Source of the DNA: Octopus bimaculoides
Lineage: Eukaryota
NCBI RefSeq assembly: GCF_001194135.2
Contig: NC_068989.1
Location: 91,951,082-92,015,081 of the forward strand
Length of the DNA: 64,000 bases
Reading direction: 5' to 3'
The translations under genes were made by a program, and so were the position numbers. Positions 9,031-55,684 of the stretch are shown piece after piece. The notes beneath the pieces are model-generated. The model saw only the letters and a list, made by a program, of their open reading frames with translations. It did not search any database and had not been told where the DNA came from. The stretch's first letter is position 1. Every line of letters begins with the position of its first letter.

Positions 9031-9199
9031 GAGAGAATGTTATTATCTGTACTTATGTACGGTTGAATAAACAGCTGTAACGTGAAATGCTTTGACCAAT
9101 AAAGAGCTAGCACGGACGGTCTAAGTGTTGAACTCCCGAACTTATGATCAAAAACTAAATTTTCTAGCAACGAAGCAATCAACTTTACTCTTTTTACAT

Positions 9200-9665
9200 T
9201 TTTACTCCTCTATTTGTTTCAGTCTCTTGACTGCGGTCATGCTGGAGCACCGCCTTTAGTTGAACAAATCGACCTCACACCGATACTGGTGTGCTTACGT
9301 CACCGTAACTTAGCGGTTCGGCAAGAGACATAGATAGAATAAGTACAAGAATAGCTACTTATTCTTTGTAAGCCTTGTACTTATTCAATTTATTTCTTTT
9401 ACCGAACTGCTACGTTACGGTGACGTAAACACACCAGTATCGGTTGTGAGGCGATAGTGGGGTGACAAACACAGACAGAAACACATATATATAAATATAT
9501 ATATACGATGAGCTTCTTTCAGTTTCCGTCTATTAAATTCGTTCACAAGGCCTTAGTCCGCTAGAGGCTATAGTAGAAGACACTTGCCCAAGGTTCCACG
9601 CAGTTGGGACTGAACCCGGAACCATGTGGTTGGTAAGCAAGCTACTTATCACACAACCACTCCTA
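9200..9665 (-). mobile_element. SINE family A
   Basis: Reverse complement of the family A head (9600-9665) and tail (9215-9260), with an internal rearranged piece. Confidence 0.85.
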
Positions 9666-32891: not shown

Positions 32892-33512
32892 CTCTTTGAT
32901 ATTTTTTGACTTTTCCGTTTTTTGTCTTCATCTCACATCTTACACCCCCAGCGAATCTTCATATCCCCCTCCATCTCTTCTTCTTCTTCTTCTTCTTCTC
33001 CTTACCTCCTTCCTCTCCTTCCGTAGTTCTCAATCATTTCTTTTTATCTATCAACCCCTTTGATTACTATTGAATTCTGGTAGACTTCCATATCCGTTCA
33101 GTGTTTATAAACTAATTTTATAGAAACTTTTATCAAAATTCCTATTTTGTTTTTCAGATTTTAACTTGTGTAGGTACAACTATGTAAAATGTCAGAGAAA
33201 AATAAAACTGGAGATGCTTCTTGAAATAAATCTATCTAAAGCAAGATATTTTAAATAGATCCTTAATATAACTCTGAGGGTCACCATTTTATTATTTTGC
33301 TTGCGTGGATCCCAACAGATCTTACACAGACCACGGTTGAGAAGCCGTATCGACTCAACTTTTTCCATTCCTTGTCTTCTTGGCCTCTTTATTTGTCTTC
33401 TCCGTTTTTCCTCTCTCATTATCATCAGGCTTCTGAAACCGTTAACCTATTGTGTGCTGTAGACACCAACTTGAAATTTCTTTTTCACATAATTTAATTA
33501 CAGAAGTGTTTA

Positions 33513-33553
33513 GGCGCAGGAGTGGCCGTGTGGTGGCGCAGGAACTTGCTTAC
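33513..33553 (+). mobile_element. 5' head of a family A SINE, split by insertions E1 and E2
   Basis: ggcgcaggagtggccgtgtggt...aacttgcttac matches the family A start; the continuation is found only at 37359. Confidence 0.8.
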
Positions 33554-34768
33554 GATCGGCGCATGCGTCGCTAGTTAGTCTGTTGCTTACAGAGAGAGAG
33601 ATGACGCAAGTTTCGGCTCCTTAATAGAAAAAAAGAACAACAAAACTAAAGTTCGGAAGGTGAGTCGTTTTTTTTGTCTTCCGAGCTGGGCGCGAATTTA
33701 TTGTGCTTTCTTTTTTTCAGTAAGTTCCTGCCTAGCTCTGGGGCAATCTCGTCTGCCTTAGAGGTTTTAAATTGTAGCTCGCTTTAGCATGCAAAAATAT
33801 TGTGTTCCTCGTTATTGGATGACGTGTTCGAGCCGCCATAACGGCAGACTGAGAATTTTGTTGAAAACTTTTTATTGATTAAAATTCTGTGCGGCGTTTT
33901 TTCGCCAAATAACCTGTGCATTCTGGTAGGGGTGTTTGGCCGGAAAATTTGTACTCTGTGAATTTTACTCTGTGGAGTTTATCTAAACTGGGGTACAAAC
34001 GGGAAGAACCCTGACTATTGGATTTACCTGGCTGAAGTATTATACAGAGCCAAGGATTGCCTGTCTGTTGTATTTAAGAACATTGTTTTCTTTTTATTTT
34101 TATTTTTCCCCTCCTCCTATTTTTTCTTTCTTTCTAAATTTCAGTTCCCTCTTCTGTTTCTCATTATTTAAATTTCTGTTTCAAGAACCGACCCTCACCC
34201 CCGAAGATGAAGAATTATCTTTTTCTACAAGGGCGGGGAGGTGGAAAAATAGTAGAACATAAAGAGACAGTAGATATGGCCTGCACACGGGATCCCGAAT
34301 AGCTTCCGAAGATAGCTGTGGAGGTCATAAGGTGTGAGAAAAGCGGAGAATACTTAAAGAGGATTGTCGGATATGGTCGGTTGACCCCAACATGACATAT
34401 GCCTCGTACATGAATGAGAACTCAAGCGGCACTGAAGATAATGATAGATATGTTGATGGATATATCGATGAATAAGAGGTGAAAAAGCCTCCTTAAGAGG
34501 TTTGAAACCCCTTCTTATTTTTTTTATTTGTAGTGGTTTAAAACCTTAATTGTGTTTTTTAAAAAAATGCTAAGAGGTTTTAGTGCCTCCTTTTTGTAAG
34601 AGGTTTGAAACCTCATATTGATTTTTAAAAAAAATAGAATATATGTTTTTTGAGAAAAACCCAATCGTCTCTCAGTTATTCATTGTATGTCATTTCATTT
34701 TCATACATTGTGTTGTTCAGCCCGTAGCCAGTCTGTATATTGCTTTATTGCAAATATAATGAAATAGA
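33554..34768 (+). mobile_element. Element E1: internally deleted non-autonomous retroelement-like unit
   Basis: 5' region homologous to E2 (cgcatgcgt..., gtgttcgagccgccataacgg.., aaaattctgtg), C-terminal coding remnant EELxxFYxxGE..K.VE...TRDPE, and 3' end gcaaat...atgaaataga followed by the target motif. Confidence 0.7.
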
Positions 34769-34896
34769 GTAGCTTGCTTATGAACGACGCATGCGTTGTG
34801 AGTTGGTTTGTTGCTTCCAAAGTGGAAAGACGTGAGTTTTTAGCTCAGCCAAATGAAAGAAAAAAAAAATAACAAAGTCGTTAAGGTAGGCCTTTT

Positions 34897-35194
34897 GGAT
34901 CTTTTTTAAAACGGGGGCCACATTTTTCATTAACGAAACACTTTGAAACTTGGAACACTGGTAGAATGTGTCATATAAAACATCTTTTTCTCTTAGTCTT
35001 CTTAAAAAAAAAGGAAATCCATAAATTATTCCATGTTAAAGTTGTATTTCTGTAATTTCAACCAATCACTGACGTCCATTCAGCCGATATACATTAAGTG
35101 CCGACTACATAAACAAACGATTCTGAAACAATTAACCCTAACCCTAACTCTAACCCTAGGGTTAGGGTTAAAGCAAATTTAAAATGAAAAAAGC
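34897..35194 (-). mobile_element. TIR MITE with internal telomere-like repeats (partial, runs into gap)
   Basis: TIR ggatcttttttaaaacgggggcc; reverse-complement match to 50600-50883; (CCCTAA)n/(TTAGGG)n core at ~35135-35170. Confidence 0.85.
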
Positions 35195-36237
35195 NNNNNN
35201 NNNNNNNNNNNNNNNNNNNNNNNNNNNNNNNNNNNNNNNNNNNNNNNNNNNNNNNNNNNNNNNNNNNNNNNNNNNNNNNNNNNNNNNNNNNNNNNNNNNN
35301 NNNNNNNNNNNNNNNNNNNNNNNNNNNNNNNNNNNNNNNNNNNNNNNNNNNNNNNNNNNNNNNNNNNNNNNNNNNNNNNNNNNNNNNNNNNNNNNNNNNN
35401 NNNNNNNNNNNNNNNNNNNNNNNNNNNNNNNNNNNNNNNNNNNNNNNNNNNNNNNNNNNTGCCTAGCACTGGAGGCAACTTCGTCTCCTGGTGGCGACTT
35501 CAAATTGTGGGTCGCTTCAGCGAGTAAACGTATCTTGCTTCTCGTTCGTCGTTATTGGTGGCCGTGTTCGAGCCGCCATAACGGTGGACTGAGAATTTTG
35601 TTGAATACTCTTTTTGAGTAAAATTCTGTGTGGCATTTTTTCGCCAAATAACTTGTACATTTAGGTGGGCGTATTTCGCCAGATAAATTTATACTGTGTG
35701 GATTTTTCCTTGTGGAGTTTACCTAACTGGAGTACAAACGAGAAGAATCCTCACTATTGGATTTCCTTCGCTTTGAGCTGCGTGAATAAGAAAAATAAGA
35801 GACTGACTGCAGGTAAGATTTTTTTTTCTTAGTTTGGTTGGGATTTATTGTTGTGTTATTTTTAATAGATACCTGCTAAACTCGAAACATTTTTGTCTGC
35901 TTGTGGTGAGTCTAGTTGTAGTCACTTTTTAGTGAGTTAACAATTTTGGGGGTTTGTTTTGGTGGGCGTATCTCGCCACACAAATATTGTTTCTGTACCT
36001 TCTCTACTGAAATTCCTGCCTCGGAGTACCTGGTTTGCTGCAGTTCTGCTTGGGAATACCTGGTTTTGCTGTTGCTACCAAGTTCCAGTTTGGGTCAGGA
36101 GTACTTGTGGCCAGAAGAGTCTGTTCGTCGTATCTTTTTTTTGTTTTTTCTGAACTGTTTTCTCTTCTCCCGTTTACTTCAAAGACTTTCTTTTAACTAT
36201 CTCTCTGAACTGTCTTTTGTTTTGTTTTTTTTCTAAC

Positions 36238-37160
36238 ATGATGGACAAAAAGAACAAGAGAAGCACTGCTTAAACAGCAAGAGAAGACGGTGGTGTTGAG
36301 AAAGTTCTCGACGCCATTGCCGTTTTCTCCTAGCAGGAAATTGAAAAGGAGTTAGCAGACTGTCAACTGTGAAGTTTAATACCCGGGGTGTCGAATATGC
36401 AACGATTTGGTTGCTATTTGACACTCCAGAGGAGGCTTGTATTTTTGAGAGCCAGCCCCTGGAGAGCAATACAATTCTATGTCTTCCAATGTATTGTGGG
36501 AGGAAATTGACGAGGGCTTGGGTCTGCGGGCTGACACCCAATATAGAAGCAGGGTTGATACATGCCACTGTCTGCCAGTGTCTGGGTGGCAGCAGCGCCA
36601 AGCTCCTCAGTGTAAAGCTGTTACCTGTGGCTGATTGGTTGCTCACCGAAGGATTCTAGGGCAGAGTGAGGGGAGATGGATCTCCCGGTTACGGAGGAAA
36701 CCTACCCTTCTTCAGTAAAAAAGAATAAAGAGGAAGAAAAGAAACGGGACATTGCCGGAAGTCGGTAACACAATACCGACATATCCCAGAACTTCGTCGG
36801 TAGTAATTGTGCCATCGACGGTGGAAGGGATGACCCCGCTCCTTAAAGGAGAAGAATTATTAGTCTTCTACAGGGACGGGGAACTGAAAGTGGTGGAGAA
36901 GCACCAAGAGGGAGCAGTTCTGGCCGGCATACGGGATCCTGAATGACCTCCGCAGATAGCTGCGGAGGCCATAAAGGCGTCTGTGGTCCAAAGGCTGTAG
37001 GAACTCAGACAGGAGTATCGCTTATGGCCGGGTGGTACCGGTACGTCACACTCTTTATGCTTGAGTGAGTCGTGGGAAATGGCGGGGCACGGGGTCAGAA
37101 GCGATACTGAATTTGAAGATGTTGAAGAAGAGGACTACGGGCAATAGGTAGGAAAACCTC
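36238..37160 (+). pseudogene. Frameshifted ORF of E2, putative LINE ORF1/RRM-like protein
   Basis: Reconstructed MMDK/RTREALLKQQEKTVVLRKFS.../VKFNTRGVEYATIWLLFDTPEEACIFESQPLESNTILCLPMYCGRKLTRAWVCGL.../EELLVFYRDGELKVVEKHQ...RDPE; C-terminal part conserved with E1 at protein level. The ORF1 assignment is inference. Confidence 0.45.
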
Positions 37161-37358
37161 GTCATTGTAAAATGATTAGAGGTTTGAAACCTAGTGCTGT
37201 TTATTCTAAAAAAGAACATTTTTTTTTGTGGAGACGGCGGTCGGTGGGCGCGGTTCGTTTCCCTCATTAATATTTTTATATTCATTTCATCCCATTAATG
37301 TAAGAGTCCAGCCCGCAGTTACTCTGTCATACCGCTATGGCAAATTGTATGAAATAAA

Positions 37359-37496
37359 GTAGCTTACTTCCCAACCACGTGGTTCCGGGTTCAGTCCCAT
37401 TGCACGGCACCTTGTGCAAGTGTCTTCTTCTATAGCCTCGGGTCGACCAAAGCCTTGTGAGTGGATTTGGTAGTCGGAAACTGAAAGAAGCCAGTC

Positions 37497-37550
<54 letters not shown>

Positions 37551-37760
37551 TGGTGTATCTGTGTTTGTCCCCATCCAGCATCGCTTGACAACCGATGCTG
37601 GTGTGCTTACGTTCCCCTAATTTAACGGTTCTGCAAAAGACACCCATAAAATAAGTAGTAGGCTTGCAAAGAATAAGTCCTGCGGTCGATTTGCTCGATT
37701 AAAGGCTGTGCTCTAGCATGGCCGCAGTCGAATGACTGAAACAAGTAAAATAATAAAAGA
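37359..37760 (+). mobile_element. Remainder of the split family A SINE
   Basis: Resumes gtagcttacttcccaaccacgtggttccgggttcagtccc... through the full tail. Confidence 0.9.
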
Positions 37761-38606
37761 ATACATCTTCATTTGTTCTTTTATTCTTTCATTAAAATCC
37801 ATTCATAAACTAGAATTTCTAGTTCTTTCTACTCTAACGAACACTATTTACTATATTTAGATTTAAAACAGTTATTAGTGCATCGTACGTAGTGTTACTA
37901 TATCGTGTGAGGCAAAAATGCTGTTTTACATACGCAAAAAGAATGTCATATGAACGCACTGTGTTAAAAAGTATTTGTGAAAGGCAGACGAAAGTCGTTC
38001 TAGCATCAGCTGTTGAAATTGCTAGCTGACTTTTTTTTGTTAGATTGTAACAGTAGCATATGCTCGTTGTCAAACGCATTCCAAGACGTGATATGTCGCC
38101 AACAATATAAAACTGCAAATAATCACGGATGTAGCAAATAGCTGCCAAGCTGAATCCGGATTCAAATAACCATTTGTATATCATACTGAATGTTAATACC
38201 TCGTAAATGGCAAAGGAGAAACTCGTAAATATGGTTTCGGATTTGTTGCCAGGAATATATGGGTGCGGGCATGAGTGTACGCACGAGCGAGCGTGAAGCT
38301 ACGCGTCCTGGTCACTAGGATGTCGCAAGCACTATAGCAAGATCGGCAGCGCATTGTACTTTTGAACAAAGCACGTCATCTTATAGGTCTCCAACCCACA
38401 CAGCTGTCGATCGGTCAACGTTCCTAGCTGGAGTTCCTAGCTTGGTGGGTGGCATCACTCGAAAGCTGAAACAATTCGAAGAGCATATTGTGAGCAATGC
38501 TCTGTATCACATCCGATAGCCTAGTCAAGGAGCAATATCTATCTATTTATCTATCTCTCTATCTATCCATTTGTATGTGTGTGTGTGTGTAAGTATGTAT
38601 GTATGT

Positions 38607-50329: not shown

Positions 50330-50883
50330 GGATCTTTTTTAAAACGGGGGCCTCACTTTTCATTAATGTTTTACGTAGTGTTTTTGGTACCGAAAGGCTT
50401 TCAAACTTCGTATACTTATCTATTTTGTGTTATAGAACAGAAAAATATTTTTGTATTCGAATTTATTTCATGTAAAAAATTGTCTTATTTCGATAATTTC
50501 AACCAATCACTGACAAGTATTCAGTTGTTTATATTTACTCCTTTGGCTGATTAAGTGGTGTAAAGCGTATTTAATTTCCATAGCTTCGTTTTGCTTTTTT
50601 CTTTTTAAATTTGCTGTTTTACCCTAACCCTATCACCGATAGAATTGTTTCAGAATCGTTTGTTTATGTAGTCGGCACTTAATGTATATCGGCTGAATGG
50701 ACGTCAGTGATTGGTTGAAATTACAGAAATACGACAACTTTAACATGGAATAACTTAGGGATTTCTTTTTTTTTTAAAGAAGACTAAGAGAAAAAGATGG
50801 TTTATATGACACATTCTACCAGTGTTCCAAGTTTCAAAGTGTTTCTTTAATGAAAAATGTGGCCCCCGTTTTAAAAAAGATCC
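50330..50883 (+). mobile_element. Complete 554-bp MITE with a 23-bp TIR, subterminal CCAAT-containing inverted blocks and a CCCTAA core
   Basis: ggatcttttttaaaacgggggcc ... ggcccccgttttaaaaaagatcc; aatttcaaccaatcactgac in both orientations; accctaaccct at ~50620. Superfamily not determined. Confidence 0.9.
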
Positions 50884-51149
50884 CTATAGCCTCTCTTTAC
50901 GCTACCTCTTCAAGCCTTACCATTCTTTCACGGCTCTTCTTCGTTACAACTAGAAATGACTCTCAAGAATAAAAACATTAATCTTCTTGGGCGTTCCAGT
51001 TTTCTGAAAAACATCAATGGGCCGATTGAGTAAACCTATCAATATCAAACCTATAATGACTACCGGAAACAGCTGTAAGTGAAATTTACTACAATCAAGA
51101 AAAGCATATAACAACCATTATTTCTACCTTGTCTCGTATGTATATGTAT

Positions 51150-54165: not shown

Positions 54166-55085
54166 NNNNNNNNNNNNNNNNNNNNNNNNNNNNNNNNNNN
54201 NNNNNNNNNNNNNNNNNNNNNNNNNNNNNNNNNNNNNNNNNNNNNNNNNNNNNNNNNNNNNNNNNNNNNNNNNNNNNNNNNNNNNNNNNNNNNNNNNNNN
54301 NNNNNNNNNNNNNNNNNNNNNNNNNNNNNNNNNNNNNNNNNNNNNNNNNNNNNNNNNNNNNNNNNNNNNNNNNNNNNNNNNNNNNNNNNNNNNNNNNNNN
54401 NNNNNNNNNNNNNNNNNNNNNNNNNNNNNNNNNNNNNNNNNNNNNNNNNNNNNNNNNNNNNNNNNNNNNNNNNNNNNNNNNNNNNNNNNNNNNNNNNNNN
54501 NNNNNNNNNNNNNNNNNNNNNNNNNNNNNNNNNNNNNNNNNNNNNNNNNNNNNNNNNNNNNNNNNNNNNNNNNNNNNNNNNNNNNNNNNNNNNNNNNNNN
54601 NNNNNNNNNNNNNNNNNNNNNNNNNNNNNNNNNNNNNNNNNNNNNNNNNNNNNNNNNNNNNNNNNNNNNNNNNNNNNNNNNNNNNNNNNNNNNNNNNNNN
54701 NNNNNNNNNNNNNNNNNNNNNNNNNNNNNNNNNNNNNNNNNNNNNNNNNNNNNNNNNNNNNNNNNNNNNNNNNNNNNNNNNNNNNNNNNNNNNNNNNNNN
54801 NNNNNNNNNNNNNNNNNNNNNNNNNNNNNNNNNNNNNNNNNNNNNNNNNNNNNNNNNNNNNNNNNNNNNNNNNNNNNNNNNNNNNNNNNNNNNNNNNNNN
54901 NNNNNNNNNNNNNNNNNNNNNNNNNNNNNNNNNNNNNNNNNNNNNNNNNNNNNNNNNNNNNNNNNNNNNNNNNNNNNNNNNNNNNNNNNNNNNNNNNNNN
55001 NNNNNNNNNNNNNNNNNNNNNNNNNNNNNNNNNNNNNNNNNNNNNNNNNNNNNNNNNNNNNNNNNNNNNNNNNNNNNNNNNNNNN

Positions 55086-55505
55086 GAAGGCATATCTGAG
55101 AGAGCAACTATAAAAAGCAATGGTCCCAAAACAGTGCCCTGTGGAACACCGCTCATTATTTGTGTTCTCATAGAGGTGGCTCCATTAGCCACTACTGCCT
55201 GACTTCTATCTTTCCGAAAGTCATGCAACCACTCTCCAAGTTTTCCAGCTATGCTAAGATCACGCAGTTTGTGGCATATCACACCATGATCCACTTTGTC
55301 AAAAGCTTTTGCAAAATCAAGGTATATTACGTCCACATTTGAATTGTTGAGTAACTGCCTCAACACCCAGTCGTAATGTTGTAAGAGCTGGGTCAGGCAG
55401 CTCCTACCTGGTCGAAAGCCATGTTGGGTATCACTCAGCAATTTATTTTCTTCAAGGAATGCGATCAGTTTTCCTCTGATTATCCTTTCCATGACTTTGC
55501 TGATG
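55086..55505 (-). pseudogene. CR1/L2-type LINE RT fragment with an uninterrupted ~140-codon frame, cut by a gap
   Basis: KVMERII...LSDTQHGFRPGRSCLTQLL...VDVIYLDFAKAFDKVDH...SGVPQGTVLGPLLF (RT domains 2-4). Confidence 0.95.
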
Positions 55506-55684
55506 TGTACATTATTTAAAACGGACGGACTGATATCTTTACCTTGCTTGTTGTTACCACAACTTTTCGGCTGATGTACTTTCCTGCCTTCATCAGATGT
55601 TCTGATGGAATTTCGAATCCAAGCCTTTAAGTGACTAATGAGAACAGAGTACCTCTTAATCACATAAAGGGTTGGATTCGAAAT
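55505..55684 (-). mobile_element. Second H2 foldback copy (one full arm plus a 25-bp stub of the other)
   Basis: Minus-strand acatCTGATGAaggc..gccGAAAagt; hairpin atttcgaatccaagcctttaagtga / tcacataaagggttggattcgaaat. Confidence 0.8.

What the first reader, a model, noticed from the sequence alone, without database searches (positions are those of the whole stretch)
33513..37400. Tandem, site-specific insertion of two RT-less retroelements into the tRNA-like head of a SINE
Seen: a family A SINE starts at 33513 (ggcgcaggagtggccgtgtggt...aacttgcttac) and resumes only at 37359 (gtagcttacttcccaaccacgtggttccgggttcag). Between them lie two diverged relatives, E1 (33554-34768) and E2 (34782-37358). 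They share 5' ends (ga.cg.cgcatgcgt...) and 3' ends (cagcccg.ag...gcaaat...atgaaata.a), and each 3' end is followed by the same motif gtagcttRctt (34769, 37359), with a degenerate copy before E1. SINE5'-TSD-E1-TSD-E2-TSD-SINE3' is the layout expected when a sequence-specific non-LTR element inserts twice at one target. Established: Tx1-clade LINEs include families specific for tRNA/snRNA/5S genes, microsatellites and other transposons. Inference: E1/E2 are a non-autonomous family that parasitises the most abundant SINE between its A and B boxes, giving it a huge pool of safe targets and disabling the SINE's Pol III promoter, probably mobilised by a Tx1/L1 partner. I do not know of a description of this in cephalopods.
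Basis: partly seen in the sequence, partly recalled or inferred. Interest (0 to 1): 0.85.

Follow-up and report, generated by a model that had tools for sequence, protein, structure and literature searches.

The report
SINE-targeting, RT-less octopus retroelements in tandem
Two diverged copies of a retroelement family that has a gag-like ORF1 but no reverse transcriptase sit head to tail at one exact position inside an octopus SINE, and a relative in another octopus species starts at the same SINE position, so the family probably uses this abundant SINE as its landing site.

Summary
One SINE copy (33513-33534 and 37359 to about 37763) is split by E1 (33554-34768) and E2 (34782-37358). Each element is followed by a copy of SINE nt 25-37 (GTAGCTTGCTTAC), and a degenerate copy precedes E1.

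E1 and E2 are only 72-79% identical in their best blocks. That is more than in-place duplication allows, because the host SINE is only about 9% from its consensus.

New findings:
- E2 carries a decayed gag-like ORF1, 62-64% identical to Octopus sinensis LOC115225585. It has no room for an ORF2. E1 has lost ORF1 altogether.
- The O. sinensis locus is not orthologous. There, the intact-ORF1 relative (E3) also begins directly after nt 37 of a SINE head.
- The N gap lies inside a nested MITE. E2 is colinear with E1 across the gap.

Best reading (confidence about 0.7): an ORF1-only, non-autonomous non-LTR family that integrates by target-primed reverse transcription at one site of the SINE, giving a 13-bp duplication.

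The autonomous partner and its clade (Tx1, R1 or other) are unidentified. Only three elements at two loci could be examined, so a genome-wide flank census is still needed. I class it as a new variant of a known kind: target-specific LINE derivatives with a SINE as the target.

The parts
33513..33534 (+). SINE head, nt 1-22 (includes the A-box-like TGGCCGTGTGG)
   Evidence: Aligns to the 5' ends of the other window copies.
33535..33543 (+). Unexplained 9-nt repeat of SINE nt 1-9 (ggcgcagga) at the E1 5' junction. It takes the place of SINE nt 23-27.
   Evidence: Read directly from the sequence and compared with intact heads.
33541..33553 (+). Left, degenerate copy of the 13-bp target (ggaacttgcttac; consensus GTAGCTTGCTTAC)
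33554..34768 (+). E1: a 1215-bp element that has lost ORF1. It keeps the family 5' end, block B, the block C hairpin (34303-34324), three GAGGTTTGAAACC hairpin motifs and the family 3' end.
   Evidence: BLAST and alignments to E2. tblastn finds no ORF1 remnant.
34769..34781 (+). Middle copy of the 13-bp target (gtagcttgcttat)
34782..37358 (+). E2: the longer family member. In order it has the 5' end, a nested MITE and the gap, block B, the 5' UTR, a decayed ORF1 and the 3' UTR.
34897..35194 (+). Left part of a MITE nested in E2 (terminal inverted repeat GGATCTTTTTTAAAACGGGGGCC). The rest lies in the N gap at 35195-35459.
   Evidence: 88.5% identical to the full copy at 50331-50885 on the minus strand.
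36238..36745 (+). Decayed ORF1 of E2. It has frameshifts in the first ~40 codons. 36360-36653 matches P0001 residues 56-153 at 62% identity. About 93 codons, including the zinc knuckle, are deleted, and there is an in-frame stop.
   Evidence: phmmer E = 1.7e-32, tblastn, three-frame translation, dN/dS 0.40.
36947..36968 (+). Conserved hairpin cctccgcag-atag-ctgcggagg in the 3' UTR. The E1 equivalent is at 34303-34324 and keeps its pairs through G-U changes on the + strand.
   Evidence: fold_alignment.
37359..37371 (+). Right copy of the 13-bp target (gtagcttacttcc), continuous with the rest of the SINE
37359..37763 (+). Remainder of the interrupted SINE (nt 25 to the 3' tail, including the B-box-like GGTTCAGTCCC and the internal microsatellite)
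   Evidence: Alignment with five other copies. The locus copy is 8.7% from a leave-one-out consensus.

Best explanation
E1 and E2 are two independently inserted, diverged members of a non-autonomous non-LTR retroelement family. The family keeps (E2, E3) or has lost (E1) a gag-like ORF1, and it has no ORF2.

Proposed mechanism:
1. An unidentified autonomous LINE supplies endonuclease and reverse transcriptase in trans.
2. Its endonuclease recognises the SINE head and nicks the bottom strand between SINE nt 24 and 25. The family's RNA is then reverse-transcribed from that nick.
3. The top strand is cut after nt 37. The 13 bp GTAGCTTGCTTAC are therefore duplicated on both sides of each insert.
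4. Each insertion regenerates the 13-bp site. A second family member could therefore land next to the first, giving SINE5'-T-E1-T-E2-T-SINE3'.

Shown:
- the anatomy of the locus;
- the divergence of E1 and E2;
- ORF1 homology and the absence of ORF2;
- the same SINE position at a second locus in a second species.

Inferred:
- target-primed reverse transcription;
- trans-mobilisation;
- an internal Pol II promoter around the conserved CGCATGCG palindrome at the 5' end;
- inactivation of the SINE's Pol III promoter by separation of its A and B boxes.
For: 1. All junctions fall at the same SINE nucleotides. The junction strings are unique in the window, and seven other SINE copies are intact there.
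2. E1 and E2 differ by JC 0.25-0.35 even in their best-conserved blocks and are otherwise unalignable. The host SINE is only JC 0.093 from a leave-one-out consensus, so in-place duplicates could differ by about 0.19 at most.
3. The E2 ORF1 remnant matches O. sinensis LOC115225585 (E = 1.7e-32). That locus (L001) is not orthologous to the window.
4. In L001, the 5' end of the relative (GCATGCGTTG..TTGCTTCCA) beats all 2000 shuffles in alignment to the E2 5' end. It follows directly on GGCTGAGGCATGGCTGTGTGGTAAGTAGCTTGCTTCC, a SINE head that matches the consensus 25/25 at nt 11-35.
5. No ORF2 follows ORF1 in L001, and none fits into E2. E1 and E2 share this layout, so the ORF2-less form itself propagated.
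6. dN/dS is 0.40 and dS is 0.61 between E2 and the O. sinensis ORF1. This points to a long-lived family with a once-functional ORF1.
7. A more distant relative in O. bimaculoides has a zf-CCHC knuckle above the Pfam cut-off, as in type I LINE ORF1 proteins (PMC5203782).
8. The elements have no TIRs or LTRs, a 13-bp duplication, and precise full-length 5' ends.
9. There is precedent. Tx1 LINEs and their non-autonomous SINEU partners target one site of a mariner transposon, and neighbours often lie side by side (PMC4494074).
Against: - Only three elements at two loci could be examined. No octopus genome could be searched at the DNA level.
- No RT or endonuclease partner was found, so the retroelement nature rests on ORF1 type, duplication length and lack of terminal repeats.
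- E3 is truncated at L001 ~10975. Its 3' junction and the rest of its SINE are missing, so for E3 alone a carried SINE head cannot be excluded.
- The left junction of E1 is irregular (9-nt repeat of SINE nt 1-9), and the three 13-mers differ at 1-2 positions each.
- Pfam does not call an RRM, and the AlphaFold model is poor (pLDDT 39).
- The two halves of E2 are joined across an N gap.
Confidence: 0.7

Rival explanations
1. There was one ancient insertion into the SINE. It was later duplicated in place (unequal exchange between the flanking 13-bp repeats), and the two copies then diverged.
For: The elements are head to tail and separated by exactly one 13-mer. That layout is also what unequal exchange would give.
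Against: - E1/E2 distance in the best blocks (JC 0.25-0.35) exceeds twice the age of the host SINE (2 x 0.093).
- Most of the two elements cannot be aligned, and they differ by a ~1.1-kb segment.
- This does not explain the same SINE position at the non-orthologous O. sinensis locus.
Confidence: 0.08
2. The SINE head is not a target. It is carried by the element. It could be fused on by RT template switching to SINE RNA, as in U6-L1 chimeras, or it could be a 5' leader or promoter module of the family.
For: - E1 and E3 are both preceded by a SINE head that starts at SINE nt 1.
- The extra ggcgcagga at the E1 junction looks like a second SINE 5' end.
Against: - E2 is preceded by only 13 nt of SINE.
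- The rest of the same SINE follows E2 with a 13-bp overlap, which is the signature of insertion into a pre-existing SINE.
- Template-switch chimeras have variable switch points and no downstream remainder.
Confidence: 0.1
3. The layout is an assembly artefact. The scaffold join across the N gap (or collapse of repeats) created an apparent second element.
For: This draft assembly has 16 N gaps in 64 kb, and one lies inside E2.
Against: - E1, both of its junctions and the E2 5' junction lie in one uninterrupted stretch (33513-35194).
- The E2 3' junction and the SINE remainder lie in another (35460-37763).
- The sequence on the two sides of the gap is colinear with E1.
- The missing length predicted from the MITE copy (~320 bp) is close to the 265 N.
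Confidence: 0.05
4. E1 and E2 are non-autonomous DNA transposons with small-RNA-gene target specificity (Dada-like), or another cut-and-paste element.
For: Dada transposons target specific sites in tRNA and snRNA genes (PMC3706591).
Against: - The elements have no terminal inverted repeats.
- The duplication is 13 bp against 6-7 bp for Dada.
- The only coding remnant is a gag-like CCHC protein, not a transposase.
Confidence: 0.03

Closest known systems
Tx1-clade target-specific LINEs and their non-autonomous partners (Tx1L in Tx1D; Tx1-Mar plus SINEU in Mariner-N4_AMi; Kojima 2015, PMC4494074)
   Same: - Insertion at one defined position inside another transposable element.
- Non-autonomous elements share the target.
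- Several inserts can lie side by side at one target.
- The ORF1 type (RRM/CCHC variants) is compatible (PMC5203782).
   Different: - The target here is a SINE head. I found no description of that in the searchable literature.
- No RT or APE sequence of the family is known, so clade membership is open.
- The non-autonomous elements here keep an ORF1 and are 1.2-2 kb long, unlike short SINEU elements.
R1 and R2 elements of rDNA and their internally deleted derivatives (SIDEs). This comparison is from my own knowledge of the Eickbush laboratory's work.
   Same: - Strict site specificity in a multicopy target.
- R1 makes a 14-bp target duplication, close to the 13 bp here.
- Internally deleted non-autonomous copies use the same site.
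- 5' junctions are variable.
   Different: - The target is a mobile SINE, not a host gene.
- No HDV-like ribozyme was detected at the 5' end (Rfam; no conserved fold).
- R2 has no ORF1.
HAL1 (half-L1), the ORF1-only L1 derivatives of mammals. This comparison is from my own knowledge (Bao and Jurka 2010).
   Same: The family propagates with a conserved ORF1 and without ORF2, so it must borrow RT and endonuclease in trans.
   Different: HAL1 is not site-specific, and its ORF1 is of the Transposase_22 type. Here the ORF1 is a CCHC-type gag-like protein and the insertions are at one SINE site.
Dada DNA transposons (PMC3706591)
   Same: They target defined positions in tRNA or snRNA genes, which are multicopy Pol III/small-RNA sequences.
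   Different: Dada elements have TIRs, 6-7-bp duplications and a DDE transposase. None of these is present here.

Membership tests
Target-specific non-LTR retrotransposon (general) | Independent copies occupy the same nucleotide position of a repeated target | tested here: met
   E1, E2 and O. sinensis E3 all start after SINE nt 37. E1 and E2 both end before SINE nt 25. The sample is only 3 elements at 2 loci.
Target-specific non-LTR retrotransposon (general) | Target-site duplication of fixed length, with no LTRs or TIRs | tested here: met
   The 13-bp GTAGCTTGCTTAC flanks E1 and E2. The termini GAWCGRCGCATGCG... and ...ATGAAATARA are not inverted or direct repeats.
Target-specific non-LTR retrotransposon (general) | Encodes, or shares a 3' tail with an element that encodes, an RT plus endonuclease | not testable with these tools
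   There is no RT in E1, E2 or E3. The only RT fragment in the window (about 55086-55680, minus strand, RVT_1) shares no sequence with E. No octopus genome could be searched at the DNA level.
Tx1 clade | RT domain groups with Tx1 in a phylogeny; APE-type endonuclease | not testable with these tools
   No RT or endonuclease sequence of the family is available.
Type I LINE ORF1p (RRM plus CCHC knuckle) | CCHC zinc knuckle | tested here: inconclusive
   The distant relative in L002 scores zf-CCHC 23.5 bits, above the 20.8 cut-off. P0001 has a degenerate knuckle (14 bits). The knuckle region is deleted in E2.
Type I LINE ORF1p (RRM plus CCHC knuckle) | RRM fold | tested here: inconclusive
   There is no Pfam or PDB sequence match. 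The AlphaFold model has pLDDT 39 with a beta-alpha-beta pattern only, and no fold search was run on it.
ORF1-only non-autonomous LINE derivative (HAL1-like) | ORF1 under selection, ORF2 absent in propagating copies | tested here: met
   dN/dS is 0.40 over 98 codons. There is an intact 281-aa ORF1 in L001 with no ORF2. E1 and E2 share the ORF2-less 3' architecture.
R2-type co-transcribed element | HDV-like self-cleaving ribozyme at the 5' junction | tested here: not met
   There is no ribozyme family at E <= 10 in 33300-37900. The consensus fold of the three 5' ends has about 0 kcal/mol. Divergent ribozymes could be missed.
Penelope-like element | Hammerhead ribozyme motifs in terminal repeats; GIY-YIG/RT ORF | tested here: not met
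   There is no hammerhead hit and no such ORF.
Dada DNA transposon | TIRs, 6-7-bp duplication, DDE transposase | tested here: not met
   There are no TIRs, the duplication is 13 bp, and there is no transposase ORF.
tRNA-derived SINE (the target) | tRNA-like head with A and B boxes | tested here: inconclusive
   A-box-like TGGCTGTGTGG (nt 11-21) and B-box-like GGTTCAGTCCC (nt 54-64) are present. ARAGORN and Rfam do not call a tRNA. The tRNA origin of octopus SINEs is from my own knowledge of the literature.

The most novel reading that the evidence does not exclude
A long-lived lineage (dS about 0.6 between members) of ORF1-only retroelements, present in at least two Octopus species, uses the genome's most abundant SINE as a dedicated landing pad. 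It would be a parasite of a parasite. This implies an undescribed site-specific LINE whose endonuclease reads SINE nt ~20-40. It would also inactivate each SINE copy it hits by separating the A and B boxes.
Probability: 0.55. Interest if true: 0.7.

Novelty: new variant of a known kind. Interest (0 to 1): 0.55.

Why it matters
Site-specific LINEs are known for rDNA, snRNA, 5S and tRNA loci, microsatellites, telomeres and a few DNA or LTR transposons. A SINE as the dedicated target would be a new class of safe harbour.

Octopus SINEs are thought to be very numerous (this is from my own knowledge of the literature; about 9 copies lie in this 64-kb window alone). Their sequence and activity are set by another mobile element's machinery. 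That makes this a three-layer parasitic system, in which a LINE mobilises the SINE and a second retroelement family lives inside the SINE.

It would also point to a sequence-specific endonuclease with a defined ~13-20-bp site. It would add a molluscan ORF1-only family comparable to mammalian HAL1. It also shows that at least one annotated octopus 'gene' (LOC115225585) is a transposable-element ORF1.

Tried and rejected
- **Other E copies in the window.** BLAST at word size 9 found only the nested MITE's second copy.
- **Ribozymes or other RNA families.** None in 33300-37900. There is no conserved 5' fold and only a weak 3'-terminal fold.
- **E 5' end derived from the SINE head.** The local alignment is no better than shuffles.
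- **E 3' tail shared with the SINE 3' tail (same LINE partner).** No better than shuffles.
- **Pfam on E2 ORFs.** Nothing.
- **Word-indexed protein search with the E2 ORF.** Nothing.
- **Exact look-up of 10 window ORFs.** None is in the collection.
- **Metagenome scans.** Empty for the 5' junction pattern and for ORF1 relatives.
- **P0003.** It has no contig on record.
- **L002 (a distant ORF1 family).** It has no DNA similarity to E, and its 5' junction is hidden in Ns.
- **Structure prediction of P0001.** pLDDT 39, so no fold search was run.
- **PDB and NCBIfam sequence searches.** Nothing.
- **Literature.** No description of SINE-targeting LINEs in cephalopods was found, and there is no Tx1 mention in the octopus LINE paper.
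Full report
**What is in the sequence**

The window looks like a cephalopod draft assembly: it is AT-rich, it has 16 N gaps, and it carries many copies of one ~400-bp SINE. Intact copies of that SINE begin GGCGYAGGAGTGGCTGTGTGGTAAGTAGCTTGCTTACCAACCACATGGTTCCGGGTTCAGTCC.

At the finding, SINE nt 1-22 lie at 33513-33534, and the SINE resumes with nt 25 at 37359. It then runs to its normal A-rich tail at about 37763. Between these lie:
- E1 (33554-34768);
- the 13-mer gtagcttgcttat (34769-34781);
- E2 (34782-37358).

E2 is again followed by the 13-mer (gtagcttacttcc). A degenerate copy (ggaacttgcttac) precedes E1. The 13-mer is SINE nt 25-37. Both 5' junction strings and both 3' junction strings are unique in the window, and shuffles expect none.

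**The gap**

E2 positions 34897-35194 are not E sequence. They are the left 298 bp of a MITE with 23-bp terminal inverted repeats (GGATCTTTTTTAAAACGGGGGCC). A complete copy of about 555 bp lies at about 50331-50885 on the minus strand.

The MITE copy predicts that about 263 bp of MITE are missing. The alignment with E1 predicts another ~55 bp of E2. Together that is about 320 bp against 265 N. After the gap, E2 resumes colinear with E1 position 176. The two sides of the gap are thus best read as one E2 interrupted by a MITE. This is a parsimony argument, not proof.

All four informative junctions lie in uninterrupted sequence: SINE/E1, E1/13-mer/E2 and E2/SINE.

**E1 and E2 are relatives, not recent duplicates**

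They share four blocks:
- the first ~95 nt (72% identity), including the palindrome CGCATGCG at nt 7-14 and a splice-donor-like AAG|GTRRG at about nt 105;
- a 316-nt block (79%);
- a 126-nt block (75%), which holds a 9-bp hairpin kept through G-U changes on the + strand;
- the last ~100 nt.

The remainder cannot be aligned, and E2 has about 1.1 kb that E1 lacks.

The host SINE copy is JC 0.093 from a leave-one-out consensus of the other window copies. Two copies duplicated in place after the SINE arrived could therefore differ by about 0.19 at most. The best E1/E2 blocks differ by 0.25-0.35. The two elements had diverged before they arrived, so this is two insertion events at one site.

**What the elements are**

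Neither element has room or reading frames for a reverse transcriptase.

A three-frame reading of E2 suggested a broken gag-like ORF. An exhaustive HMMER search with window:36345-36656 found two proteins in 1.84 billion. P0001 is 281 aa, E = 1.7e-32, 64% identical, and is named LOC115225585 of Octopus sinensis. P0002 is 155 aa, 38% identical, and is LOC128249544 of O. bimaculoides. A third protein, P0003, came from a profile search.

tblastn shows the state of the E2 ORF1 (36238 to about 36745):
- it is frameshifted near its start;
- it matches P0001 residues 56-153 in one frame;
- it lacks about 93 codons, including the zinc knuckle;
- it contains a stop.

E1 has no ORF1 remnant.

The knuckle of P0001 is degenerate. 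The more distant L002 copy carries a zf-CCHC above Pfam's cut-off. An ORF1 with a CCHC knuckle is the type I LINE ORF1p pattern, reported as typical of Tx1-like elements among others (PMC5203782). No RRM could be confirmed by sequence or by a usable model.

Between E2 and P0001, dN/dS is 0.40 and dS is 0.61. The ORF1 was therefore under selection in a family much older than the split between the two species.

In L001 the intact ORF1 is not followed by any ORF2. In E2 only 613 nt separate the ORF1 end from the 3' terminus. E1 and E2 share that post-ORF1 architecture. The form that spread is thus ORF1-only, comparable to mammalian HAL1 (from my own knowledge).

**Independent test of site specificity**

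L001 was retrieved purely through the protein, and it is not orthologous to the window. Upstream of its ORF1 the sequence reads ggctgaggcatggctgtgtggtaagtagcttgcttcc|tgtgcatgcgttgattagttgcttccacac.

The left part is a SINE head starting at SINE nt 1, and it matches the consensus 25/25 at nt 11-35. The right part aligns to the E2 5' end better than any of 2000 shuffles, and an AAG|GTAGGC follows at the same distance as in E2. The 5' UTR (59% over 464 nt), the ORF1 (76%) and 137 nt after the ORF1 (66%) are also homologous to E2.

A third, deeply diverged member in another species therefore starts within a few nucleotides of the same SINE position. For a random insertion the chance of hitting one given nucleotide of this SINE is of the order of 1e-4. 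That figure is my estimate from SINE density, not a computed value.

E3 is truncated at about L001 10975, and the rest of its SINE is not within 10 kb. Its 3' junction could therefore not be checked.

**Mechanism proposed**

The features that fit a non-LTR element inserted by target-primed reverse transcription are:
- a 13-bp duplication;
- the absence of TIRs and LTRs;
- precise 5' ends with small junction irregularities;
- a gag-like ORF1;
- dependence on a missing RT.

The proposed steps are a bottom-strand nick at SINE nt 24/25 and a top-strand nick at 37/38. Each insertion recreates the 13-mer on both sides, which would allow a second hit next to the first. Kojima (2015) describes exactly such neighbouring inserts for Tx1-Mar and SINEU in a mariner target (PMC4494074).

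The site lies between the A-box-like and B-box-like motifs of the SINE. Loss of Pol III promoter function is inferred from that position, not tested. The partner's clade is unknown. Tx1 and R1 are natural candidates, since R1 makes a 14-bp duplication (from my own knowledge), and RLE-type elements are not excluded.

**Rivals**

- In-place duplication is disfavoured by the divergence argument and by L001.
- A carried or template-switched SINE head could fit E1 and E3. It does not explain E2, which has only 13 nt of SINE upstream and the remainder of the same SINE downstream with a 13-bp overlap.
- Mis-assembly can only affect the link across the gap.
- A Dada-like DNA transposon fails on TIRs, duplication length and coding content (PMC3706591).
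- R2-like ribozyme processing and Penelope-like identity find no support.

**Limits**

None of the collections available here allowed a DNA-level search of an octopus genome. The claim of site specificity rests on three elements at two loci. The dispersal of the family and its autonomous partner remain to be shown.

**Verdict**

The thing is best described as a SINE-targeting, ORF1-only non-autonomous retroelement family. That makes it a new variant of the known class of target-specific LINE derivatives. Interest is moderate to fairly high for transposon biologists, pending a genome-wide census.

Noticed in passing
window 34897-35194 and 50331-50885 (minus strand): A MITE family of about 555 bp with 23-bp terminal inverted repeats (GGATCTTTTTTAAAACGGGGGCC). 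The copy nested in E2 has a palindromic telomere-like expansion (ccctaaccctaactctaaccctagggttagggtt, 35133-35171) where the other copy has only tagggttagggt.
   Followed up: partly
window 33535-33543: A 9-nt repeat of SINE nt 1-9 (ggcgcagga) sits at the E1 5' junction in place of SINE nt 23-27. It could be a leader carried in from a donor SINE or junction filler.
   Followed up: no
window 33659-33718; 34886; L001 9586: All three family members keep a splice-donor-like AAG|GTRRG about 100-105 nt from the 5' end. E1 has a matching polypyrimidine-CAG 60 nt downstream. This may be a retained 5'-UTR intron.
   Followed up: no
window about 55086-55680 (minus strand), next to N gap 54166-55085: A fragment of an unrelated LINE reverse transcriptase (Pfam RVT_1, E = 3e-16). 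It shares no sequence with E1 or E2.
   Followed up: partly
L001 10001-10846 (O. sinensis CM016886.1): The annotated gene LOC115225585 ('uncharacterized protein') is the intact ORF1 of a transposable element that sits in a SINE head. Its CCHC knuckle is degenerate (HLCLEPGHIKKNC), and the element is cut off at about 10975 by an unrelated microsatellite-rich sequence.
   Followed up: partly
L002 8480-10429 (O. bimaculoides CM046615.1): This is a distantly related ORF1 family (P0002, P0003). An ORF1 C-terminal half with a clean CCHC knuckle is followed by an N run (9037-9358). After that come a 5' UTR ending in AAAGGTAAGT and an ORF1 N-terminal half. This is another head-to-tail pair, and its junction is hidden in the Ns.
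   Followed up: partly
window 34480-34625 and 37178-37195: A near-palindromic motif GAGGTTTGAAACC(T/C)C occurs three times in the E1 3' region and once in E2. It is a candidate protein-binding hairpin of the 3' UTR.
   Followed up: no
window, most of the 16 N gaps (e.g. 3972, 5238, 18318, 22947, 26244, 32205): Most assembly gaps in the window abut (TA)n, (CA)n or other simple repeats, several of them the internal microsatellite of SINE copies. Several SINE copies are therefore truncated by gaps.
   Followed up: no
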